In this document: positions 1-17,837 of the stretch, in pieces
Numbering within the stretch: position 1 is the first letter of the stretch
Layout of the letters: each line of letters starts with the position of its first letter
Assembly: GCA_021613535.1 (NCBI GenBank)
Contig: CP075493.1
Location: forward strand, 3,224,001 to 3,288,000
Direction: 5' to 3'
DNA: 64,000 bases
Source of the DNA: Adineta vaga
Lineage: Eukaryota; Animalia; Rotifera
Notes under the pieces: generated by a model
Database searches by the model: none
The model's input: only the letters and a program-made list of their open reading frames with translations
Told to the model about the DNA's origin: nothing
Translations under genes and position numbers: made by a program

Positions 1-2185
1 ATACCTGTTCTCTCTCCTTTATAGACACTCACCACACTAAACCGCGGGCACAATCAAATCGGCGATCAAGGAGCACAACATATTGGTGATGCCTTGCGAA
101 TAAACACAGTAACATTCATTCGCTCTTGTCGTAATTGACACATACCTGTTCTCTCTCCTTTATAGACACTCACCACACTAAACCTCGAGAACAATCAAAT
201 CGGCCATCAAGGAGCACAACATATTGGTGATGCCTTGCGAATAAACACGGTAATACTCATTCGCTCTTATCCTAATTGACACATACCTGTTCTCTCTCCT
301 CTATAGACACTCACCACACTGAATCTCGAGAACAATCAAATCGGCGATCAAGGAGCACAACATATTGGTGATGCCTTGCGAATAAACACGGTAACATTCA
401 TTCGCTCTTGTCCTAATTGACACATACCTGTTCTCTCTCCTTTATAGACACTCACCACACTAAATCTCGAGAACAATCAAATCGGCCATCAAGGAGCACA
501 ATATATTGGTGATGCCTTGCGCATAAACACGGTAATACTCATTCGCTCTTGTCCTCATTTACACACCCATGCTCTCTCTCCTCTACAGACACTTACCAGA
601 CTAAATTTCGGGTACAATCAAATCTGCGATCAAGGAGCACAACATATTGGTGATGCCTTGCGAATAAACACGGTAATACTCATTCGCTCTTGTCCTAATT
701 GACACATACCTGTTCTCTCTCCTCTATAGACACTCACCACACTAAATCTCGGGTACAATCAAATCGGCGATCAAGGAGCACAACATATTGGTGATGCCTT
801 GCGAATAAACACGGTAACATTCATTCGCTCTTGTCCTAATTGACACATACCTGTTCTCTCTCCTTTATAGACACTCACCACACTAAATCTCGAGAACAAT
901 CAAATCGGCCATCAAGGAGCACAATATATTGGTGATGCCTTGCGAATAAACACGGTAATACTCATTCGCTCTTGTCCTAATTGACACATACCTGTTCTCT
1001 CTCCTCTATAGACACTCACCACACTGAATCTCGAGAACAATCAAATCTGCGATCAAGGAGCACAACATATTGGTGATGCCTTGCGCATAAACACGGTAAT
1101 ACTCATTCGCTCTTGTCCTCATTTACACACCCATGCTCTCTCTCCTCTACAGACACTCACCGGACTAAATTTCGGGTACAATCAAATCTGCGATCAAGGA
1201 GCACAACATATTGGTGCTGCCTTGCGAATAAACACAGTAACATTCATTCGCTCTTGTCCTAATTGACACATACCTGTTCTCTCTCCTCTATAGACACTCA
1301 CCACACTGAATCTCGAGAACAATCAAATCTGCGATCAAGGAGCACAACATATTGGTGATGCCTTGCGCATAAACACGGTAATACTCATTCGCTCTTGTCC
1401 TCATTTACACACCCATGCTCTCTCTCCTCTACAGACACTCACCGGACTAAATTTCGGGTACAATCAAATCTGCGATCAAGGAGCACAACATATTGGTGCT
1501 GCCTTGCGAATAAACACAGTAACATTCATTCGCTCTTGTCCTAATTGACACATACCTGTTCTCTCTCCTCTATAGACACTCACCACACTAAACCTCGGGC
1601 ACAATCAAATCGGCGATCAAGGAGCACAACATATTGGTGATGCCTTGCGAATAAACACGGTAATACTCATTCGCTCTTGTCCTAATTGACACATACCTGT
1701 TCTCTCTCCTCTATAGACACTCACCACACTAAATCTCGGGCACAATCAAATCGGCCATCAAGGAGCACAACATATTGGTGATGCCTTGCGAATAAACACG
1801 GTAATACTCATTCGCTCTTGTCCTAATTGACACATACCTGTTCTCTCTCCTTTATAGACACTCACCACACTAAATCTCGGGGACAATCAAATCGGCCATC
1901 AAGGAGCACAATATATTGGTGATGCCTTGCGCATAAACACGGTAATACTCATTCGCTCTTGTCCTCATTTACACGCCCATGCTCTCTCTCCTCTACAGAC
2001 ACTCACCAAACTAAATTTCGGGTACAATCAAATCTGCGATCAAGGAGCACAACATATTGGTGCTGCCTTGCGAATAAACACAGTAACATTCATTCGCTCT
2101 TGTCCTAATTGACACATTCCTATTCTCTCTCGTCTATAGACACTCACCGTACTAAATCTCCGGGGCAATCAAATCGGCAACCAAG
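1..2185. repeat. 141-bp tandem repeat (exon+intron unit), about 15.5 copies, with an exact 282-bp dimer duplication (1012-1293 = 1294-1575)
   Basis: Direct reading: strict 141-bp period, no indels between units, and introns nearly as similar to each other as the exons are. Confidence 0.97.
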
Positions 2186-2232
2186 AAACAAAGTATCTCC
2201 GAGACACTTTTGGAAATAGGTTGAGGTTTTAG
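25..2232 (+). CDS. 3' part of a leucine-rich-repeat protein (RI-like/NLRC3-type 28-aa LRRs, one LRR per exon); 5' end lies before the window
   Basis: 16 exons start at 25+141k (25, 166, 307 ... 1999, 2140). The first 15 are 84 nt, phase 0, encoding e.g. TLTTLNLENNQIGHQGAQHIGDALRINT (LxxLxLxxNxI), separated by 57-nt GT..AG introns. The terminal exon 2140-2232 reads TLTVLNLRGNQIGNQETKYLRDTFGNRLRF-stop. No stop in any exon. Confidence 0.93.
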
Positions 2233-3199
2233 TTTGGGCTCGAGGGACATTGTTTTTTAGTGCTCTTTTCTGGAGGGTTTTTTCAGAGGAAACCGATGTG
2301 GTGAGAAATGAATACACGGTGTGCTTCGAAGTCGTACTTGTCGTACAATAACGTGTTTTGTTGTAAGCTCTTGATTTTGGACTGTGAGAGATGTGTTTAT
2401 TATCTAAGTTGTTGATTTGTGTATGTCCAATATAGCGAAATCGCGTGTTTGAAATGCACTATAATTTATGAGATGAAGTTCGATGGGTATCATACTATAT
2501 TTTGTGAAACTGTCTACTCTTAATATAATGTCTTCTGAAAATGTTTCAATAGTGGAAAGGTTATGAAGAAGAAGGACGACCGTCGATGCGTGCTATGAGC
2601 CTTTTAATGGGTCCGCTGCACTTATTCCCATCGCTTATCTATTAGGAACGACTGGGAAATTCTTTCGTAAACATTCTGTTGTGCATGAAAACGTAGCAAA
2701 ATATTCTTTCGAACTTTATTTTGAATATTTCTCATAATAGAGAGTTTAGTTTAAAGTCTGAGTGCCTCACAAATCGTTACTATATTTGTAACGTTAGAGA
2801 GTTGGGGTTGGCGTCAAGATAAAGTGGATGACGAGTTTGACAACTTTATTTAGTTGCTTCTTTGATTTGACGTTTGATGTCTAATGATAGAAAGATGTTT
2901 TGTATTCGTACATCTTTCAAGATAAAAAAGAAAGTTTTAGAGAAAAGAGTGTATCTCAGTCTGAACTAACTAATGCTTAGAGACACAATTTAGGATATAA
3001 ATCGTATCTGGATGCAACTTCCGATATATTTGAACTTCAATGAAAGACGGCGAAATGTCTTTGTAAAACACAAAGAGTGTTTCATATTTAGATAGTGACC
3101 CGTACTTATAGTCCCTTCCTATTCATTATCATTCTGAGAATTACAAGAGTATGATTAATTCGCGAGTGGTAAAGTCGTTCTGTCTTAAGTTTACACATA

Positions 3200-3800
3200 T
3201 TTCTTTTTGAATATATTCATCATCGATGTTGATGAAACCGACGATACTAGATCTATCGAAGTTTTTCATGCTGTACATTTAAATAATTACACATGATAAT
3301 GAACATTTAGTTGTTGAATGTACATCCAAAATAGTTTCATTATCTAATATGACGGTTTTGTTTATTTGAGAAATCAATGTGAACTGCCTTTCTGAATTCA
3401 TCGATTGTGATGAACATTGTTCTAAAATATACCATCGACGCATGTATCATGACATTCGGTTCATTGAACCAATGGCATATTGATCACTGACTTTTAGACT
3501 ATGAATATATTGATGAAGTGTATAATTGTCATATTTACACTGAATGGAAATTTTCTTTCATGTAATATTGGTATTTTAACAAAGATAAGATTATATCTGA
3601 CATGAATTAACAAATAATATCTAACGTTAGTCGAAAAGAGATAACAAAATTAATCATAAACTTTGTTTGGTTTGATTTAATCCATTTGGATTGCAATGCT
3701 CTAAATATATTTGTAAAAAATATCGAATTCGTATAATAATTACCTAAAACCTTTGAACAATTTCACAGCATCCAAACAATGAGAATTCAAACGAGTGTTG
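3200..3800 (-). pseudogene. Possible decayed rotifer-type F-box/LRR gene fragment
   Basis: Broken minus-strand frames such as LDAVKLFKGFR*LL and QYIHSLKVSDQYAIG resemble recalled bdelloid F-box proteins. Many stops and frameshifts; weak. Confidence 0.25.
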
Positions 3801-4989
3801 CATCATAACCAAGATAAAAATGAAGACATTATCAAACGTCATTCAAAGACGAGCTTGTAAATTTTAAAATAACCGATTGTAAACGGATATTATCCGTTGT
3901 CCTAATTAGGTAAATAACTATTGAATCCATACAAAAAATTTAATAAACTCTTTTTCTTTATTTTTCAATAGTTGATGTTTCCAGATAAAAACTTTCTCTT
4001 CTATCAGAAAACATATACATTTTGACCAAAATTATAGAGTATATGATTGTTCATTCTTTTTTCAATGTTTTAAATTCTAATGAAAACAAATAATAATGTT
4101 GATGTCTTGTGTAGAAGAAGTTTTTCTTTTCTATTTTTATGGCAAAAGAGATAAAAACTTCCATATTTAGACTTACGAAATGAGAACAAAATTAAAAATG
4201 AACATTCCGTAAATCTCATCTATATTTCTACTCATTTTCTTTCTTATTTATAGCCAAGCAGTAATTTATTAGAGCAACTCTATTTTCATTTAATTATCAT
4301 AAGTGTTCTAATCGTTTTTGATCATTGTCTTTGAAGGTAATATTTGTTTAAAGCATCATGTGATATATCCTTCTCATTATCGTCTTTCGATAGATCCCTA
4401 TTATTTTATTCTTCTATAGAATAATGTTGTCTATTCATTTATGTAAATATAGGTTTACAATAGAAGGCCTTCTGAAATACTCGACTTTTTTTCGAAACCT
4501 ATTTAATTCTCATTTGATCGTATCTTACGTTAATATTACAAGAAACTATGTTTTATTTCAGATTCTCTCAACATTAAAAATCTATTGTGGAACACTTTCA
4601 TATTATTTTCCTTCGACACAATTTGAGATCAATTGCCTCTATACTTTCCGAAATATACACAATACATTATGACTTTCTCATATCCCAATTACCATTTCTC
4701 TGCAATATAGATCGGTCTAAATATAAAAGAAGGAAATATTTAGTTTTCTATATAAAATATAACTCACACTTCGTTAGACTTCGATCTGAATCTAAATGAC
4801 AATAGAAAATATTTAATCTAAAATTCAAAATATCACTCAACTTTAATCAGATATGGCTATGAACCGAAATGATAACAATAAATATTTAACATATTGTTTT
4901 GAAAATAACTCATTTTTACCCACATATCTATGCAAACCTAAATGATAATAGAGAATGTTTCATTTCGTATTTGAAATATTACTTATTCT

Positions 4990-5870
4990 TAATCAGATCT
5001 CGATATGTACCTATACAACAATAAGAAATATTTCATATGATATTGAGTTTCGAAAGCTGTCCGAATAGAAAGAGGCATTGAACAAGTTGTATTGAATATA
5101 TCTCTTGATAGCTTCTGAAAGACTTGAAATATGTGGATGAAATTCGATGTAGATTCTGCTAACATTCTAAGAATCTCAGTACTGCTTAAACCAAAAACAA
5201 AAGTTGGGTGTAGCAATTAAAAGAATTTTTTTCGCAAACTTCAATCACAAAATGTTGTTGGTAAAAAGTCACCATTTGGGTCACTTATCATCTTTCATAA
5301 GTTTCATGCGGGATCCATGCTTTGAAGTTAAATTTTCGGCGATTATAAAATCCTCAGCCCGTCCCTGTTTACTAGTCTCATTATACAAAGATATCTTCTA
5401 TGCTCAAGGGTATGCAAATACCCCTACATACTATCAGTTGATGACTGCGTGATATCTCTACATAATCGAATAGAGGGGTGGGTGTGGTAGATCATTTTAT
5501 TTGTAAAGAATATTTTTGAAAGATTGAGCTCGGTGCAATGATAAACTTTTGAATAGTTCTTTAGTTCATTTCATCAGAGTTCATGGACTTGAGCTGATCA
5601 ACTCCTACCCTCTATTGTTGACATAAAATATAAGTTAGTTTGAGCTATATTAGAGTCGTTCTCTGTTAACTTGTAACTGGCCTGAACATGATTTTGTTAC
5701 ATGTAAGTAATAAGAGAAAAAGCTCCCTATCAGATTTGGATGACTGAAAAATTGCTTGGAATAATCATATACTGATAGTGGACTTCCACCATCGTCGATG
5801 CAAAACATTAAGTTGTTCAGTTCATACCTAAGATCGTTATTGACAACTTGAAATGGCCAAAGCATTTCCG
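4990..5870 (-). mobile_element. Possible decayed CMC/EnSpm-type transposase relic
   Basis: Fragments in colinear order on the minus strand (LWPFQVVNNDL..RYELNNL, DLP, FLPTTFCD, KYFLLLY) echo animal EnSpm-like transposase motifs (LWPxQxxINELP..R, DLPA, FLLY). Interrupted by stops and shifts. Confidence 0.35.
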
Positions 5871-6078
5871 TTTTTTGTTATGACAAAACTCAAAAGAGAA
5901 AAGAAAGTTGTTAAATTGTTGTTGACTTGCATGAACAAACGAACGTATATACATTTTTTGAGTGTGTGACTCTCTTCTTCAGTTGAGGAAACTTACGATA
6001 CTCCAACATTCACTGGGACAGCTATATCAGGTTGCGGATTTTAGAGAAGAAACTTTACATTTAGTAACGTCGAAGGAA

Positions 6079-6490
6079 AAAATCTCTATGGTTCAATATT
6101 ATCAGACCGAACCCTTTCAAACTGAGTATTTTTGGGCAGAACCCTTTTGGTTCAAAATAAATAAAACAGAACTTTTTAGGGTTCGGGATTTAATAGGCAG
6201 AACCATTTCGGTTTCTTACAAGCCTGTTCATAAGCTTACATGGCTTCGGATTGGTACACAGAACTTTTTAAAGTTCTGCAGTTGTACTAACGAACCAAAT
6301 GGATTCAGTTTCGTCTCACGAAGGAGTTTTCAAGGTTCAGTAGAAAAATAACTAAACCTTTTGTAGTTTAAGGGATGACTGACAGAACTCTTCATAGTTC
6401 AGAATTGTTGCCCAGAACCTTTCTTGGTTTCTCATATGTCATACAGAACTTTTTCTGGTTCTGAAGATGTTGCAGAACCCAAAAAGGTTT
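6079..6490. repeat. Array of about 14 degenerate 15-16-bp palindromes (GAACY-N5/6-RGTTC) with unique ~14-15-bp spacers, period about 30.5 bp
   Basis: Motif starts at about 6079, 6109, 6139, 6169, 6200, 6231, 6261, 6292, 6323, 6354, 6385, 6415, 6446, 6475 (e.g. gaacccttttggttc, gaactttttaaagttc, gaactttttctggttc). Confidence 0.85.
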
Positions 6491-6682
6491 TGGAACACTC
6501 CTTTTCTTCTTTCAGAGGATAGATAGAAACAATTAATATCATTATATTTATCAAACTTACGTATTTTTAATGTTCGACTAGTACCGATCGGTCCACAGAA
6601 AGAATATCTCAATAGAGGATTTTGTTCAGTTTTCGATGCTGTATCTTTTAGTACATTAAACGAATAGTTTCATAAAGCTCTT

Positions 6683-6745
6683 CCCAGGTCGACAAATCCG
6701 ATATTGGATCCGATCGGATTCGAGTATCCGATTGGTCGACCTGGG
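6683..6745. mobile_element. 63-bp near-perfect palindrome, probable minimal MITE (CCCAGGTCGAC...GTCGACCTGGG)
   Basis: 11-bp perfect terminal inverted repeat extending with a few mismatches to a central ATCCGATCGGAT. GC-rich relative to its flanks. Confidence 0.7.
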
Positions 6746-7040
6746 TTAGAGTCTAAATAAATCTCGATTTCTGGGCATACTTTTTGACAAATCTCAAAAT
6801 AGTCTCGGGAGTGGTTGTGAGTAAAATTGATGTATTTTTTATTCGTTCAACCAGATGCGCTAAAATTTGGATCTCGAGGTTTTCAATGATGCTGAACAAA
6901 ATCAAAACATAAAATCAAGAAAAGAAATTTTGACGAGTGTTTCTTCTCTTTAAGAGAGTTTTTTAAAGAATATAGATGCGTTAATCATCATTATAGTTCT
7001 TTCAGAGAGGGGTCAGCGAATCCTACGGATGAGCGTTACT

Positions 7041-7335
7041 TGTTGTTATTGTTGTTTGAAAGAAAATAAAATGTCATTGATGATATTTGTCATATTTATA
7101 AAGCAAACAACATTCTAATACAATTCAATCAAAATCTGCAATAAAATCATTATGTGTTGAATTCTATGAATTGTTCATACAGTGTGATATTCCATGTTGA
7201 TCCTCTGGTTTTCGACGATAAGCTTCCGATCGACCAAATGATGCGTAAGACATAAATATCCAATCAGATATACTTAAAAATGATAGAATAACAATCGTGA
7301 TAATAATACTCGATGATGATCCATCATAAATTTTT
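7041..7335 (-). pseudogene. Degraded local duplicate of 11045-11530 (3' half of the small membrane-protein gene plus flank)
   Basis: IYDGSSSSIIITIVILSFLSISDWIFMSYASFGRSEAYRRKPEDQHGISHCMNNS*NSTHNDFIADFD* aligns with the intact copy at 11322-11530 but has a premature TAG. Flank 7041-7090 matches 11045-11090, with an internal deletion. Confidence 0.85.
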
Positions 7336-7677
7336 CGTCGATTCATCTGAGTATCGTAAGATTGATAACAATTTATTACTCATTTGATGTTAAAAAAAAC
7401 TCTGTGATTGCTTTTATTGTTGTTGCTTCTTTTTCAATAAGACTAGATTAAACAAAACTATCAAGTTTTTCTAGCAATTTTAATTTGCGATATTTGCATT
7501 ATAAATCAAATCGATGGGGAATAAGAATTCAGCGCATACTAAAGCCACTCACCAGTCAAGTGCAATTTCAAAGGAGACACGTGGACGTGATCGTCGTTAT
7601 ATTCAAAAAGTTCTTCTTATACGGTTAGACAGCAAAATCGATAACAACAACAACAACAAAGATTGACTAAATACTTA

Positions 7678-10191: not shown

Positions 10192-11025
10192 ATGGTTGAA
10201 GGAATTTATTTTGCATTCATAATCTGTGTAACGCTGCGTCTAGATCAAAACAATTTGTTCTATTGTAGCTACTGGTGATTGTTTTATTCTTTTGTATGTA
10301 TATTAAAAACTATTTTTGTACATAAATATCAATGTTTTTATCTGTTTATTAGTAAGTCAAGTAATGAATCAAATAATTTAATTCCAGTTTGGGAAGATAC
10401 ATCTATACAGTAAATATTCAAACAATTAGATTTATATTTTCAATGAACTAATATTCTCTTTGTCAATAGTTTTCGTAATCGAGCAGTTTTTGCTTATGTG
10501 AATGTGGATACGAATCCAAATGTACAAAAACGTTTTCATTTATATAAATCACCTTCGTTTATCTTTTATGTTTGAATTCAATTTTAATCAGTAGAATTGA
10601 CCATTGATTATTTTATCGTAGATTTAAACGTGGTAAAATGTATCGATATGAAGGTGCATCACGGCAACAAACAGCGTTTGTAAATTTTATCGAAAAAGAT
10701 AATCAACAAGTGAAAAGTGAAATTATTCCACCTGAATCGAATGCTTTGTAAGTTAACATAAGGATTTATATGCATATTTTGTTTTATGCTAAATCTTTCT
10801 AGTTCATTCTCGTTAGGAAATGGTGTGAAAATTATTCCAGTAAGTTGATTTCGATATGTTTCAAAGACTCGTCTCAATGTTTATTTTCTTCTGTAGATGT
10901 ATTTGATTGTTATACCAATGATTTGTTTAGTTATTGTTCTTCTCATTCTCGTATTTATTAGTAGATTTACAAAGAAGAAGAGAACAACAACGGAACGAAC
11001 ATCATTTCAAGTTAAAATTGATTAA
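10192..11025 (+). pseudogene. Thioredoxin-fold (TMX-like) protein with C-terminal TM helix, lacking CxxC; probably pseudogenised
   Basis: Spliced model ...ATGDCFILF|KSSNESNNLIPVWEDTSI|FRNRAVFAYVNVDTNPNVQKRFHLYKSPSFIL|FKRGKMYRYEG...TM...RFTKKKR. Needs a frameshift near 10257 and a donor that reads TT instead of GT near 10566. Confidence 0.7.
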
Positions 11026-11321
11026 TTTTTATTCGTTTTTTCTTCTTGTTATTGTTTAGAAGAAAATAAAATCTCAGTCATGACATATCTTGAACTAGAA
11101 TACTTTCTGACTTCTATTGATTTTAGTATTAAAACGAAAGATGATCATGAAAATATTGACATCGTAATCGATAGTAATACAACAATCCGATAGTCATTCT
11201 TCGAGTTTTTCGGTACTTTGCATTGAGTCAAATGTCAACAGAAATTTTTTTAATAATCTTTTCTTTATAGAAAATACTTCAAGAGAAAAAAATAAAATAC
11301 AGACAATAAAGTTTTTATGTT

Positions 11322-11600
11322 TCAATCGAGATCTGCAATAAAATTATTGTTCGCTGAATTTTCCATATCATTCATATAATGTGATATCCCATGTTGATCA
11401 TCTGGTTTTCTTCGATAAGCTTCCGACCGACTAAATAATGCATAAGACATAAATATCCATCCAGATATACTTAAAAATGATAGAATAACAATTGTTATAA
11501 TTGTACTAGAAGATGATCCATTGTAGATTTCATTTGTCGAATTTAATTGTAAAGAAATTGATTCAGTTGTTGATAAAGATGAACTATTTTTGATAATCAT
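11322..11600 (-). CDS. Small single-pass membrane protein, unknown function (start uncertain)
   Basis: S/T/N-rich N-terminus, hydrophobic TIITIVILSFLSISGWIFMSYALF segment, then a charged tail. Sequence is conserved with the duplicate at 7.1-7.3 kb. Confidence 0.6.
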   Translation of the reverse strand: MIIKNSSSLSTTESISLQLNSTNEIYNGSSSSTIITIVILSFLSISGWIFMSYALFSRSEAYRRKPDDQHGISHYMNDMENSANNNFIADLD

Positions 11601-13312: not shown

Positions 13313-13544
13313 AAAAAATAAAAACAAAAAATTGCGTGTCTACTTTTTTTCTTTTTTTCTAAAGTAAAAGAACATCTGAGACATGCAATGTTTTTATAAT
13401 AATAATCATGCGACAACATCTCTTACGAGTGTCGTAGAAAAGAACGTTCTCGCCACTCTAAAGAATATTGTTTTTATTCTTTTCTCGAAGAATTTCAATA
13501 ATGATGTCAATAGAAATGTTTGTTCTTCTTTCATAAATATCAAA

Positions 13545-15546
13545 ATGGCGAAGATGATAGTACAAAAATCAACGACAGATGATGAAGATAATTCATTATA
13601 TCGACATCATCTTGTTTGGCTTGATCAACATCTCAATACTTTTACTAATAAACGAATTCTTAAACGATTCAATGAACTAGATCAATATGTAAAAGCATTC
13701 GATTGTGAAAATCAATGTCTAGAATACATTCATCAACAAAATGATCGAAACTCAACATCCTACATCATCTTTATTGTTTCAGGAACATTAAGTGACAAGA
13801 TCATACCCAAAATTCAAGATTGTATATGCATACTGGCAATATTTATCTTTTGTCATAATGTTGAACAATATGAACATATTAAATATCGAAAATTTCGAGC
13901 AGTTTGTGATGATATTGATGATTTAATACGAAGAATTTCATTATGTATCCAAAGAGATAGTAATAAAACTGATTTCAGTTTCTTTTATGATCAAAAATCA
14001 ACAACATCAGCGTATTCCAATGATCAATATCCCATACGTAATTTAAAAGAAGATCAAGCACGTTTCCTCTGGTTCTATCATTGTCATAATCATATGCTTA
14101 AACTTGATAATAATGATGATCGCGATGCCAAAGCAGAAATGATTGCTCATGCTCTTCAAGAATCTACTGATAGACAAACATTATCATCGATTGATGAATT
14201 TAATCGTCAATCCTTAAGTGACAATGCTAAATCTGCTATTCGATGGTATACAGAAGATACATTTATATACAAATGTACGAATAAAATTTTAAGAAAAGAA
14301 AATATCTCACAAATATACTTGTATCGATATATTATTAAATTGCTTTGTTATCAATTACAAGAAAATTATGAACAATTTATTGAACAATATCGAAAGATTG
14401 AAAAGAAATCTTCACTTGATCTTTATCGTGGTCAATATTTGAATTTAACTGAAATTCAATTATTAAAAACGAATATTAATCATTTAATATCATTGAATGG
14501 TTTTATTTCTACTACAAGAAATAGAAAAACAGCGATGACATTTATAAAAAATCGTGTGATAGAAGGTTTAACACCTGTTCTAATCAAAATCGATGTGAAT
14601 ATGACAAATGAACATAAGATTGCTTTTGCTGATATTAGTCATATGAGCCAATATTCCGATGAAAATGAAGTTCTTTTCTCCATTGGTGCAGTATTTCGTA
14701 TTCAATCAGTCGAGTTTGATGTACAAAATGGATTATATCTTGTTCATCTTTCTTTAAATTCACACGATCAATTAAGTGTAAATCTATATATCGAAGAAAC
14801 GTATGCAAATCATGTAGAGTCAGAAGATCGTACTGTTTTATTTGGTAAATTACTATGTGACATGGGAGAATATGAATTTGCTCGTACATATTTTTCTGGT
14901 ATACTCAAACGTACATCTAATATGAATAATCAGTTACGTGCAATGTATTTGAATAATATTGGTATATGTTATTGTGAACTTGATAGAAAAGATGAAGCAT
15001 TAGAGTATTATAAAGAAGCATTTGAAATTTATAAACAAACAGAAAATAAACATGGCATAGGTGGATGTTTCCATAATGTTAGTAATGAATTTTGTTTTTT
15101 GTTAAAATATTCTTAGCGAAATTTCCTTTTTCCCCCTATAGATAGCAAGTATTCATTATACACGAGGAAATCATCGAAAAGCGATACATTTCGCTTTAAA
15201 AGCATATGATCTTCGACAAAAAGATAAAATTGAAAAAGCTTCAACTTTAAATTTACTTGGTTGTATTCGTTTAGCTGGTTCTGAACTTGATGCAGCACAT
15301 GATAATCTTCTTGAAGCTTTGAAATTACGTATAAAATATTTAGGTCGTATCAATTCCTTTCATCCTGATATTGGTATAAGTTATCAAAATCTTGGTAATG
15401 TTGATTTTAAAAACTATAATTATATTGATGCTGAAAGAAATTATTCTCGAGCGGAAGAAATCTTTCGTCATAATTTTCCTCCATCATATCCATTAATAAC
15501 AGAAATTAACAAATGTTTAAAAGAAACTCGACGAAAATTTACTTGA
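13545..15546 (+). CDS. Receiver-like N-domain + mono-ADP-ribosyltransferase (R-S-E clade) + TPR protein, paralog 1
   Basis: Exons 13545-15077 and 15142-15546. Motifs WYT..TFIY, LYRGQ, GFISTT, YSDENEVLF, then TPRs (LNNIGICY..EALEYY; HPDIGISYQNLG). Confidence 0.9.
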
Positions 15547-15839: not shown

Positions 15840-17837
15840 ATGGCAACAAATACAACACAAAATTCATCGATAGATAATCAATTAAACCAGCATCATATTG
15901 TTTGGCTTGATAAGCAAATAAATTATTCATATAATCGAGGAAGATTAAGACAAATCCGTGAACTTGATTCACAATTAAAATCCTTTACATGTGACGATGA
16001 ATGTCTTAATTATATTCAACAATTTGAAACATTGAATACAAATTCTTATATTATCTTTATCATATCAGGATCACTTAGTGAACGCATACTACCTAAAATT
16101 CACGATTCTAGTTGTATTGTTACGATTTTTATCTTTTGTACCAATGTGGATGATTGCAAACATTTAGAATATCAAAAACTTCGAGCAATTTGTAATGATA
16201 CTTATGAATTAATCGATCAAATTGAACTTTATTTAACAAGATCCAATGAACGAGAACTTCAATTCAGTTTATTTCATAAACCAGGTAAAACTTATCTTCT
16301 TATTTCATTCAATTTCATCTATTCTATTCATTAGAATTATCAACGTCAGAAAATCAATATCCCATACGTAATTTAAAAGAAGATCAAGCGCGTTTCCTCT
16401 GGTTCTATCATTGTCATAATCATATGCTTAAACTTGATAGTAATGATGATCGCGAAGCGAAAGAAGAATTGATTATTCATGCTCGTCAAGATCTACCTGA
16501 AAAACAATATCAATCATCTATCGAGGAATTTAATAATGAATCAATAGAAAAAAATCGTCGAGATGCACTTTTATGGTATACACGAAATGCTTTTATCTAT
16601 AAATGTGTCAATACAGTTCTTCGAAAAGAAAATCTTTCACAAATTTATCATTATCGTTATATTATTAAATTATTATGTTATCAATTGAAAGATTACTCTC
16701 AAACATTTCAACGAAATACATCATTGCGTCTTTTTCGTGGTCAACAATTTCGAATCGAATATATAACTCTACTTGAAAATCATCAAAATGATTTAATTTC
16801 TTTTAATGGTTTTATGTCGACAACATTAGAAGAAGATATTGCAATGAAATTTGCATTTCGATATCGTAAAGATAATTTAAAAAGTGTTGTTTTCATCGTT
16901 GATGTTAATTTAGATAATGAAAGTAATGTTATTTTTGCAGATATTCGAAATATTAGTAAATATCCTGAAGAAGAAGAAATTCTTTTTTCAATTGGTACAA
17001 TTTTTCGAATGAAATCAATTGAATTGAATCAAAATAAACAATTATATATAATTCATCTTGAATTAGTCGATCATAATGAATTACAAGCAATTAAATATAT
17101 TGAACAATCATATAATAATGATGGAAACTTCATTGATCAGAAAGTTTTATTTGGAAAACTTCTATTCGATATGGGAGAACATGAATTTGCAAGGAAATAC
17201 TTTCTTGATGCACTTGATCATTTAACAGAAAATGAGAATCATCTCTATGCAACTTATGTAAATAATATTGGTGTTTGTTATAATGAACAAGGAGACAGAA
17301 AAAAAGCATTAGAATATTATAAAAAAGCATGTGAAATTTATTTGAAAATGAAAAATTATCGAGGATTAGGAACATGTCAACATAATGTAAAGATATTTAT
17401 TGAATTATTTATTAATTTTACTTGTATTTATTTATCTTTAGATAGCAAGTATTTATTATGCTGAAAGAAATTATCGCGATGCTTTAAATGAAGTTTTACA
17501 TGCTTTACATAATCGATCGAAAAAGACATTAGAAAAGGCGTCAACTCATGATTTACTTGGATGTATTTATCTAACGGAAAATAATATGGATGCTGCTGAA
17601 CATAATTTTAGTGATGCTCTTAAGATACGTCGACGATGTTTAAATGATGGAAATCCAAATCATCCAGATATTGGTATCAGTTATCAAAATCTTGGAGAAT
17701 TATGTCGAAGAAAATCGAAATTTCAAGATGCGTATAAATATTATTCTAGAGCTGCTGAAATCTTTCGTCACAATTATCCGCAATCACATCGACTAAATAA
17801 AGATATTGATCGATGTTTAAATGAACTTCAACTATAA
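15840..17837 (+). CDS. Receiver-like N-domain + mono-ADP-ribosyltransferase + TPR protein, paralog 2
   Basis: Exons 15840-16284, 16335-17386, 17442-17837. Motifs LFRGQ, GFMSTT, YPEEEEILF and TPRs; last intron in the same position as in paralog 1. Confidence 0.9.

What the first reader, a model, noticed from the sequence alone, without database searches (positions are those of the whole stretch)
1..2232. LRR receptor built from interchangeable exon+intron cassettes: candidate modular immune-receptor diversification system
Seen: each 141-bp unit is one 84-nt phase-0 exon (exactly one 28-aa LRR) plus a 57-nt intron, and the introns are almost as identical as the exons. Any unit can therefore be gained, lost, swapped or skipped without breaking frame. 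Amino-acid variation sits at codon 4 (T/R/G/K/V), 8 (E/G/R) and 9 (N/H/Y/D/G), plus 13/14 and minor changes at 7, 19 and 22, while the rest of the scaffold is fixed across the 15 full units. Established: the x positions of LxxLxLxxN form the concave ligand-binding face of LRR solenoids, and cassette-shuffled LRR receptors exist elsewhere (lamprey VLRs, exon-shuffled LRR genes in brown algae). Inference: a rapidly re-specifiable recognition protein in a probably asexual animal, diversified by unequal exchange, conversion and/or exon skipping.
Basis: partly seen in the sequence, partly recalled or inferred. Interest (0 to 1): 0.9.

Follow-up and report, generated by a model that had tools for sequence, protein, structure and literature searches.

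The report
Transposon-borne F-box LRR cassette gene
The repeat is the real, expressed leucine-rich-repeat domain of an F-box (ubiquitin-ligase adaptor) gene built from one-repeat exon+intron cassettes, and the whole gene rides inside a roughly 10-kb Helitron-like transposon that has spread dozens of copies, each with a different cassette number, through the rotifer Adineta vaga.

Summary
Window 1-2232 is a 141-bp tandem array. Each unit is an 84-nt phase-0 exon (one 28-aa ribonuclease-inhibitor-type LRR) plus a 57-nt GT..AG intron, and the last exon ends at a TAG.

The missing N-terminus is an F-box, 923 bp upstream of the window. So this is an SCF substrate adaptor, not an NLR- or kinase-type receptor.

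That element has sharp ends and no target-site duplication. It has a 16-nt terminal inverted repeat, a stem-loop after the right repeat, and a precise paralogous empty site. These are the hallmarks of Helitron-like element group 2 (HLE2).

- **Copies:** at least 22 lie at 90-97% identity on five of the six chromosomes (an 83% copy lies on the sixth), and 47 related F-box exons exist genome-wide.
- **Cassette number:** copies carry 2 to 24 LRR exons.
- **Introns:** they are as alike as the exons within A. vaga arrays, but about 50% different between Adineta species. That pattern is concerted evolution.
- **Variable positions:** codons 8, 9 and 11 change 3.2-4.7 times faster than the introns.
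- **Expression:** RNA contigs show the predicted splice joints.

Immune function, exon skipping and somatic shuffling remain untested. The scan noted other copies before (s1-494305, s1-482532).

The parts
1..24 (+). 3' end of the 57-nt intron that follows the first LRR exon (that exon lies at G000:C1:3223884-3223967, just upstream of the window)
25..2139 (+). 15 cassettes of 141 bp, each an 84-nt phase-0 exon (28-aa RI-type LRR, TLTxLNLxxNQIGDQGAQHIGDALRINT) plus a 57-nt GT..AG intron
   Evidence: LRR_6; exon-exon joints in RNA contigs
1012..1575 (+). perfect 282-bp tandem duplication (units 8-9 identical to units 10-11): a very recent gain of two cassettes
   Evidence: 0 differences in 141+141 bp
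2140..2232 (+). last exon, a degenerate capping LRR (TLTVLNLRGNQIGNQETKYLRDTFGNRLRF) with TAG stop at 2230-2232
   Evidence: same last exon in paralogues; clearly intact in 7 of 11
2233..6996 (+). non-coding 3' part of the mobile element. It is shared at 90-97% identity with the other copies and has no ORF with a Pfam match. Other copies carry about 0.74 kb more at window 4683
6997..7012 (+). right terminal inverted repeat TTCTTTCAGAGAGGGG (14 of 16 complementary to the left terminus CCCTTTTCTGAAAGAA at C1:3221219)
7013..7043 (+). 31-nt right terminal tail TCAGCGAATCC-TAC-GGATGAGCGTTACTTGT with a predicted stem-loop; the element ends at 7043
   Evidence: (82 genome matches, control 0)
10271..11540 (+). 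local paralogue of the sequence on both sides of the element. It is uninterrupted across the insertion point (about 11042-11046), so it acts as an empty site without target-site duplication

Best explanation
Window 1-2232 is the LRR domain and stop codon of an intact, transcribed F-box/LRR gene of Adineta vaga. The gene has a 46-codon F-box exon, a 668-nt intron and then 17 LRR exons.

The LRR domain is a tandem array of 141-bp cassettes (84-nt exon + 57-nt intron). It grows and shrinks by unequal exchange or replication slippage of whole cassettes. That process keeps the frame and homogenises introns together with exons.

The whole gene is the only coding cargo of a 9.8-kb non-autonomous Helitron-like element of group 2 (HLE2, the Helitron2/Helentron type). 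Rolling-circle transposition has copied it, introns included, to dozens of sites. After dispersal each copy remodelled its own array.

The encoded proteins most likely act as interchangeable substrate-recognition subunits of SCF ubiquitin ligases. Their concave LRR face (residues 6, 8, 9, 11, and 14 in the following loop) is under diversifying selection.

Shown here: the anatomy, the splicing, the element ends and empty site, the copy and cassette numbers, and the site-specific substitution pattern. Inferred: Skp1 binding, ubiquitin-ligase function, what the targets are, and who benefits (host or element).
For: - **Anatomy:**
- **Domains:** the F-box exon scores 24.9 bits against a 20.5 cut-off (PF00646) and 25.5 against 24.3 (PF12937). 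LRR_6 scores 26.5 against 23.4. The nearest solved relatives are ribonuclease-inhibitor-like LRR proteins, RNH1, NLRP LRRs and GALA proteins.
- **Splicing:** a contig joint 409->1078 (GT..AG, 668 nt; F-box exon to first LRR exon) occurs in run X3. Exon-end to exon-start GT..AG joints occur in X1 and X2. None occurs in the DNA run X6.
- **Mobile element:** identical sharp left and right ends lie in unrelated flanks in at least 11 copies each. The block C1:3221214 to window 7043 aligns with the chromosome-5 copy except for the array length and one 0.74-kb indel.
- **No coding capacity for transposition:** there are no long terminal repeats and no transposase ORF.
- **Terminal structure:** a 16-nt terminal inverted repeat is followed on the right by a 31-nt tail with a stem-loop, and there is a hairpin at the left end.
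- **Family size:** about 1-kb elements with the same ends exist. The 5' motif has 133 genome matches and the 3' tail 82, with controls of 0.
- **Link to a Rep gene:** the same right repeat plus tail lies 7.5-8.0 kb downstream, on the same strand, of three Helitron_like_N hits on chromosome 2.
- **Insertion proven:** a paralogous empty site is continuous across the junction and shows no target-site duplication.
- **Match to published hallmarks:** these features are the published HLE2/Helitron2 hallmarks (PMC11417382, PMC5148889).
- **Cassette number:** 2 to 24 LRR exons in 22 copies.
- **ORF integrity:** 171 of 171 LRR exons from 15 copies are open with AG/GT. Of 47 close F-box exons, 46 have no stop.
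- **Selection:** pN at codons 8, 9 and 11 is 0.48, 0.49 and 0.34, against intron divergence of 0.11. The bootstrap ratio is 3.2-4.7. The other 25 codons give 0.53-0.70.
- **Concerted evolution:** the same 84+57/58 cassette genes occur in A. ricciae and A. steineri. Their introns are about 50% different from A. vaga's but alike within an array.
Against: - No autonomous partner with both matching ends was read. The 5' motif was not seen near them among the listed hits.
- The 1860-aa RepHel ORF next to a 5' end at C1:18049858 lies outside that element.
- T-T insertion is compatible with the ends but cannot be proven, because the element itself starts and ends with T.
- RNA evidence comes from contigs of runs whose RNA nature is the tool's guess. 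Paralogues at 90-95% identity cannot be separated, so expression of this particular copy is not shown.
- The pN/pS figures come from non-independent pairs in a family with conversion and duplication. They are not from a tree-based test.
- Skp1 binding and ligase function were not tested.
- 4 of 11 last exons are not clearly intact: two carry premature stops, one has lost the stop and one the splice acceptor.
- In A. ricciae the one element with these ends that I saw is short and lies between two F-box-LRR genes rather than around them. The family as a whole is therefore a host family, and cargo status may be special to the A. vaga clade.
Confidence: 0.72

Rival explanations
1. This is an ordinary host F-box/LRR gene family expanded by segmental or tandem duplication. 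The shared flanks are just conserved promoters and UTRs, and no transposon is involved.
For: The F-box/LRR cassette family is large (at least 150 F-box exons). It is present in three Adineta species. In A. ricciae two such genes sit side by side, and the only element ends seen there belong to a short element lying between them.
Against: About 20 copies on five of the six chromosomes share exactly the same first and last bases of a 9.8-kb block, followed by unrelated DNA. About 1-kb elements with the same ends but no gene exist. The end motifs occur 133 and 82 times against 0 in controls. A paralogous empty site is continuous across the junction.
Confidence: 0.07
2. The intron-containing gene was dispersed by Penelope-like retroelements acting in trans, as described for an NRPS gene and suggested for an LRR gene in A. 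vaga (PMC3846280).
For: PMC3846280 reports pLTR-framed, intron-containing host genes. It mentions an LRR multigene-family member with a pLTR at its 3' end, and 31-bp 'tails' on inverted pLTRs. The tail here is also 31 nt.
Against: There are no direct or inverted repeats of pLTR size, only 16 nt. No target-site duplication is present. Rfam finds no hammerhead ribozyme at either end. The right end recurs downstream of Helitron Rep domains.
Confidence: 0.04
3. The element keeps the F-box/LRR gene for its own benefit. The adaptor recruits the host SCF ligase to destroy host factors that restrain the transposon, and the variable LRR face tracks those targets in an arms race.
For: The gene stays intact in old (about 80% identity) and young subfamilies of the element. 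HLE2 elements recurrently carry ubiquitin-pathway domains such as OTU and UCH, and HLE1 carries FBA_3 (PMC11417382). The solved relatives include the bacterial GALA proteins; from my own knowledge, those are F-box/LRR effectors that use the host SCF.
Against: There are no data on targets. Related cassette genes exist in other Adineta species with no enclosing element seen. Non-autonomous elements need no cargo to spread. The selection pattern fits a host-benefit reading equally well.
Confidence: 0.15
4. This is a VLR-like or alternative-splicing diversification system. Individual animals or cells generate different receptors by cassette skipping or somatic rearrangement of the array.
For: All cassettes are phase 0 and interchangeable. 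RNA contigs join exon ends to non-adjacent exon starts, with skips of 480, 621, 762 and 1608 nt, each equal to 57+n*141.
Against: Those joints have only 21-30 nt on the shorter side and lie in near-identical repeats. They are expected from paralogues with other unit orders or from ambiguous placement. Every copy is a complete germline gene with its own F-box exon and stop, unlike the incomplete VLR gene with flanking donor cassettes. No DNA-level somatic variants were examined.
Confidence: 0.05

Closest known systems
Non-autonomous Helitron-like elements of group 2 (Helitron2/Helentron; HINE/DINE-1, FoHeli, HelenXT families) with captured genes
   Same: No target-site duplication. Short (16-nt) terminal inverted repeats, with the right repeat 31 nt from the end and followed by a stem-loop. 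A hairpin at the left end. Ends compatible with T-T insertion. Many short non-autonomous relatives. A right end shared with Rep-encoding loci. Ubiquitin-pathway cargo is recurrent in such elements (PMC5148889, PMC11417382).
   Different: The cargo here is a complete, spliced, apparently functional multi-exon gene, not a fragment or a domain fused to RepHel. The gene has diversified in array length and in binding-face residues among the copies. The autonomous partner was not fully read.
Expanded, positively selected F-box adaptor families of nematodes and plants (from my own knowledge: Thomas 2006, Genome Research)
   Same: A large lineage-specific F-box family: at least 150 F-box exons in the genome and hundreds of 50%-identity clusters. 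The F-box is conserved and substitutions are concentrated in the substrate-binding domain.
   Different: The binding domain is an RI-type LRR array made of exon+intron cassettes. Part of the expansion is carried by a transposon rather than by tandem duplication alone.
Ribonuclease inhibitor and vertebrate NLR LRR domains with exon-per-repeat structure (from my own knowledge: RNH1 exons of 57 aa; NLRP LRR exons of 171 nt)
   Same: The same LRR class (RNH1 1dfj, NLRP14, NLRP5, NLRP3). Repeats coincide with symmetric exons, so exon duplication keeps the frame.
   Different: One 28-aa repeat per exon instead of two. Introns are tiny (57-58 nt) and homogenised with the exons. The N-terminal partner is an F-box, not NACHT.
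Animal FBXL proteins (Skp2, FBXL2 and others)
   Same: The F-box followed by LRR architecture, implying an SCF substrate-receptor role.
   Different: From my own knowledge, FBXL proteins use the 26-aa cysteine-containing LRR class. Here the repeats are 28-aa RI-type (Pfam LRR_6), and the family is multicopy and hypervariable.
Lamprey VLR genes and Penelope-mobilised intron-containing genes of A. vaga (PMC3846280)
   Same: VLR: LRR cassettes as units of diversity. Penelope case: precedent in the same species for transposon-mediated spread of intron-bearing multigene-family members, including a mention of an LRR gene.
   Different: VLR is assembled somatically from non-spliced donor cassettes; here the genes are complete germline genes. 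Penelope hallmarks (pLTRs, target duplications, hammerhead motifs) are absent.

Membership tests
F-box proteins (SCF substrate adaptors) | An F-box motif of about 40-50 aa recognised by the family profiles | tested here: met
   L036:9078-9215 scores 24.9 bits for PF00646 (cut-off 20.5) and 25.5 bits for PF12937 (cut-off 24.3). UniRef names the Adineta relatives 'F-box domain-containing protein'.
F-box proteins (SCF substrate adaptors) | Binding to Skp1 and assembly into an SCF ligase | not tested
   No complex prediction or experiment was done; the function is inferred from the domain.
Ribonuclease-inhibitor-type LRR proteins | 28-29-aa repeats with LxxLxLxxNxIgdxGaxxLaxaL, recognised by LRR_6 and by solved RI-like chains | tested here: met
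   LRR_6 scores 26.5 bits for a single exon and 112.8 bits for family member P0151. phmmer hits RI-like proteins at E 3e-44 and RNH1 1dfj at 1e-30.
Helitron-like elements, group 2 (Helitron2/Helentron) | Short (12-16 nt) terminal inverted repeats, the right one 20-40 nt from the 3' end and followed by a stem-loop | tested here: met
   CCCTTTTCTGAAAGAA at the left end pairs with TTCTTTCAGAGAGGGG at window 6997-7012. The pairing is perfect in the 1-kb relative L064. A 31-nt tail follows, with a predicted stem-loop. Criteria are taken from PMC5148889 and PMC11417382.
Helitron-like elements, group 2 (Helitron2/Helentron) | No target-site duplication; insertion between T and T | tested here: inconclusive
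   No duplication appears in 4 copies or at the paralogous empty site. The element begins and ends with T, which is compatible with T-T, but the 86%-identical empty site cannot fix the junction to the base.
Helitron-like elements, group 2 (Helitron2/Helentron) | An autonomous relative with the same ends that encodes Rep/helicase | tested here: inconclusive
   The right repeat plus tail lies on the same strand 8,004 bp, 8,004 bp and 7,466 bp from Helitron_like_N hits at C2:32651, C2:227521 and C2:219577. The 5' end of those loci was not seen, and the DNA could not be fetched.
Penelope-like element-mediated gene mobilisation | pLTRs of about 200 bp framing the insert, 8-10-bp target duplications, hammerhead ribozyme motifs | tested here: not met
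   No repeats longer than 16 nt link the ends. Rfam finds no match at either end. No target duplication is present.
VLR-type somatic LRR assembly | An incomplete germline gene flanked by donor LRR cassettes that are copied in somatically | tested here: not met
   Each copy is a complete gene with a start codon, splice sites at every cassette and a stop. Somatic DNA variation itself was not tested.
NLR / NACHT-LRR immune receptors | A NACHT or NB-ARC NTPase domain N-terminal to the LRRs | tested here: not met
   The only upstream coding exon is the F-box. No other Pfam domain was found among the ORFs tested in the 9.8-kb element.

The most novel reading that the evidence does not exclude
A rolling-circle transposon of an ancient asexual animal carries and maintains its own hypervariable F-box/LRR ubiquitin-ligase adaptor. 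It would use this to direct the host SCF machinery against host (for example silencing or repair) factors, as a transposon-encoded counter-defence. Its recognition surface would be re-tooled by cassette gain and loss and by diversifying selection across dozens of element copies.
Probability: 0.15. Interest if true: 0.85.

Novelty: new variant of a known kind. Interest (0 to 1): 0.6.

Why it matters
Helitron-like elements are known for capturing gene fragments, which mostly decay. Here a whole multi-exon gene appears to have been kept open, spliced and under site-specific diversifying selection while the element copied it to dozens of loci. That gives a concrete case of a transposon acting as the amplifier of a recognition-protein repertoire.

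For bdelloid biology it offers two things. First, a family of about 10-kb elements that is unexpectedly abundant in a genome known for low transposon load. Second, a set of natural 'alleles' (2 to 24 cassettes) with which to measure unequal exchange and gene conversion in an animal long regarded as asexual.

For LRR biology it is a clean example of exon+intron cassettes evolving in concert: the same 84+57/58 structure in three species, with introns unrelated between species but alike within arrays. Whether the adaptors serve host defence or the element itself can be tested directly by finding their substrates.

Tried and rejected
- **Other terminal structures.** I looked for long terminal direct or inverted repeats and for hammerhead ribozymes at the element ends. 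None was found, so the Penelope model was rejected.
- **Transposase or other domains in the element.** Seven translated stretches were scanned against Pfam, and only the F-box and LRR exons matched.
- **The neighbouring RepHel ORF.** I tested whether the 1860-aa ORF next to a 5' end at C1:18049858 belongs to that element. It lies outside it, on the other strand.
- **Two loci sharing only the left 350 bp (L064, L065).** They hold unrelated genes (cathepsin, a mariner transposase, a 7TM fragment). L064 turned out to contain a 1-kb element with both ends.
- **Literature.** A search for bdelloid + F-box + LRR gave nothing relevant.
- **Spliced protein.** Exons were searched one by one by reference, and database proteins P0151-P0153 stood in for full-length products.
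- **Exon skipping.** It could not be judged from contigs.
- **Complex prediction.** No job was sent.
Full report
**1.
Tandem Repeats Finder reports one array at window 1-2185: period 141, 15.5 copies, 91% matches, no indels. Cutting it at 25+141k gives 15 units. Each is an open 84-nt exon flanked by AG and GT plus a 57-nt intron. The exon encodes TLTxLNLxxNQIGDQGAQHIGDALRINT. A last, degenerate repeat exon at 2140-2232 ends in TAG. A single exon passes Pfam LRR_6 (26.5 bits against a cut-off of 23.4). Family members in the databases hit ribonuclease-inhibitor-like chains, RNH1 and NLRP LRR domains. The repeats are therefore RI-type LRRs.

**2. Where the window lies and what is upstream.**
The window is G000:C1:3224001-3288000 of a 100.8-Mb, six-contig assembly with about 30% G+C. 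A protein of this family (UJR34376.1, Adineta vaga) lies on a contig of 15,224,634 bases, the length of contig C4. The genome is therefore A. vaga.

The array starts only one unit before the window, with the first LRR exon at C1:3223884-3223967. A 668-nt intron lies upstream of that. Before it comes a 46-codon first exon, MYTFSTLPIELVYRILDHLSDFTLFCSMQNVCQRFNQILNIYHRYQ, which ends in phase 0 at GTAAGT. It passes both Pfam F-box models. The gene is thus F-box + 17 LRRs: an SCF-adaptor architecture, not NACHT, ART or kinase.

Exons were searched singly by reference.

**3. Transcription and splicing.**
Contigs of four public runs were laid on C1:3222807-3226229.
- Run X3 contains the joint 409->1078 (GT..AG, 668 nt). 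That is exactly F-box exon to first LRR exon.
- Runs X1 and X2 contain GT..AG joints from LRR-exon ends to LRR-exon starts. Several loose ends read exon end followed by exon start.
- The DNA run X6 has none of these.

The family is therefore transcribed and spliced as predicted. The joints skip 57+n*141 nt, but they have only 21-30 nt on one side and lie in near-identical repeats. They cannot show exon skipping, and they cannot be assigned to this copy rather than a paralogue.

**4. The gene sits in a mobile element.**
The array, 2.7 kb upstream of it and 4.8 kb downstream recur at 90-97% identity at about 20 places on five of the six contigs, with an 83% copy on the sixth. Further copies lie at 75-88%.

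Against the chromosome-5 copy, the shared block runs from C1:3221214 to window 7043 (9,830 bp). It differs only in array length and one 0.74-kb indel.

In 11 copies the left end is TTATTCCCTTTTCTGAAAGAAAGGGTTATA. In 11 copies the right end is ...TTCTTTCAGAGAGGGGTCAGCGAATCCTACGGATGAGCGTTACTTGT. Beyond these ends the flanks are unrelated.

Joining the two flanks of our copy gives an unbroken alignment (86% identity) to a local paralogue at window 10271-11083. That paralogue is an empty site without target-site duplication.

The element has no long terminal repeats, no hammerhead motif and no ORF with a Pfam domain other than the F-box/LRR gene.

**5. What kind of element.**
The left terminus CCCTTTTCTGAAAGAA is the inverted repeat of a sequence 31 nt inside the right end: 14 of 16 here, 16 of 16 in a 1-kb relative. 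The 31-nt tail and the left end are each predicted to form a hairpin.

The 5' motif occurs 133 times in the genome and the 3' tail 82 times, against 0 for reversed controls. Many pair up as roughly 1-kb elements.

The published hallmarks of Helitron-like elements of group 2 (Helitron2/Helentron) are:
- 12-16-nt terminal inverted repeats;
- the right repeat 20-40 nt from the end, followed by a stem-loop;
- hairpins at both ends in some families;
- no target duplication;
- T-T insertion (PMC5148889; PMC11417382).

The same right repeat plus tail lies 8,004, 8,004 and 7,466 bp downstream, on the same strand, of three Helitron_like_N (Rep) hits on contig C2.

The Penelope-mediated route described for intron-bearing genes in this species (PMC3846280) does not fit. 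There are no pLTRs, no target duplications and no ribozymes.

**6. Cassette dynamics.**
Coordinates of the conserved blocks on both sides of the array give the number of LRR exons in 22 copies: 2, 2, 2, 3, 4, 5, 7, 8, 10, 10, 11, 11, 12, 17 (this one), about 17, 18, 18, 20, 21, 22, 23, 24. The count was checked by direct listing in 12 of the 22.

In this array, units 8-9 and 10-11 are identical over 282 bp. Units are closer within arrays (p = 0.089) than between arrays (0.114). For 101 of 141 units, the nearest relative is in the same array. Whole cassettes are therefore gained and lost after dispersal.

**7. Introns and concerted evolution.**
Over 141 units from 15 copies, exon and intron p-distances are equal at 0.112 each.

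The same gene type occurs in A. ricciae (84-nt exons, 57-nt introns) and in A. steineri (84+58). In A. ricciae the introns are about 50% different from those of A. vaga, while the exons differ by about 26%. Within an A. ricciae array, introns are again as alike as exons.

Intron similarity is therefore a by-product of cassette duplication and homogenisation, not of selection on the intron.

**8. Selection.**
- All 171 LRR exons examined are open and keep AG/GT.
- Of the 47 F-box exons with at least 83% identity, 46 have no stop.
- 7 of 11 last exons are clearly intact.
- Amino-acid entropy peaks at residues 9 (3.0 bits), 8 (2.4) and 11 (2.05), followed by 6 and 14 (1.2 each). L2, L5, N10, I12, G16-I20, L24, N27 and T28 are nearly invariant.
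- Non-synonymous divergence at codons 8, 9 and 11 is 0.48, 0.49 and 0.34. Overall synonymous divergence is 0.12 and intron divergence is 0.11.
- Bootstrapping over arrays gives pN(8, 9, 11)/p(intron) = 3.2-4.7 and pN(other 25 codons)/p(intron) = 0.53-0.70.

From established LRR structure, residues 6, 8, 9 and 11 are the x positions of LxLxxNx on the concave beta-sheet. This is the pattern of diversifying selection on the binding face over a constrained scaffold. The caveat is that pairwise counts in a recombining repeat family are not a formal test.

**9. Size of the family and prior knowledge.**
The F-box exon finds at least 150 places in this genome. It also finds 532 clusters at 50% identity in public data; those looked up are from Adineta species.

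GenBank has held a member since about 2010 (ADD91459.1, 'leucine rich repeat containing protein'). PMC3846280 mentions an LRR multigene family. I found no paper describing the F-box/cassette structure or its link to a Helitron-like element. A blank in this library is not proof of novelty.

Two other first-stage notes of this scan describe other copies as F-box genes with 141-bp cassettes (s1-494305, s1-482532).

**10. Verdict.**
Three things change the picture. The protein is an F-box adaptor. The gene is cargo of a multicopy HLE2-type transposon. The intron identity is concerted evolution.

An immune role is one reading. A role for the element itself is another, since ubiquitin-pathway cargo is common in such elements (PMC11417382). 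Neither was tested.

I rate this a new variant of known kinds (Helitron gene capture, expanded F-box families and exon-per-repeat LRR genes) and of moderate to high interest.

Noticed in passing
window 13383-15116 and 16424-17464 (+): Two neighbouring long ORFs each combine an NAD:arginine ADP-ribosyltransferase domain (PF01129/PF03496) with TPR repeats. They look like a tandem pair of ART-TPR genes unrelated to the LRR gene.
   Followed up: partly
L036:6442-7213 plus window 7044-7341, versus window 10271-11540: The element is inserted in one of two local paralogous copies (about 85% identical) of an intron-containing sequence. The second copy is uninterrupted. The identity of that host gene was not determined.
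   Followed up: partly
G000:C1:18042976-18048555 (-), locus L066: An uninterrupted 1860-aa ORF with a Helitron_like_N domain (possibly an intact Rep/helicase) lies about 100 kb from the end of contig C1. It is head-to-head with a 5' end of the element family, but outside that element.
   Followed up: partly
L069:4012-4915 (Adineta ricciae, CAJNOJ010000052.1): A 0.9-kb element with almost the same left and right termini as the A. vaga family lies between two F-box/LRR cassette genes. The element family is therefore shared between Adineta species.
   Followed up: partly
L070:1275-7567 (Adineta steineri): The annotated gene model fuses an F-box + 7-LRR cassette gene (142-bp period) with PDZ domains (P0153). 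This may be a real fusion or a merged gene prediction.
   Followed up: no
L065:4034-5020 (-), G000:C4:15106734-15107720: A mariner/Mos1-type transposase ORF (PF01359, HTH_48) lies near a copy of the element family's left-end module.
   Followed up: no
P0001 (1246 aa) and P0037 (984 aa), ENA contigs: The F-box exon matches 20 and 9 separate stretches in these two long predicted proteins. They may be read-through translations of tandem F-box units and were not examined.
   Followed up: no
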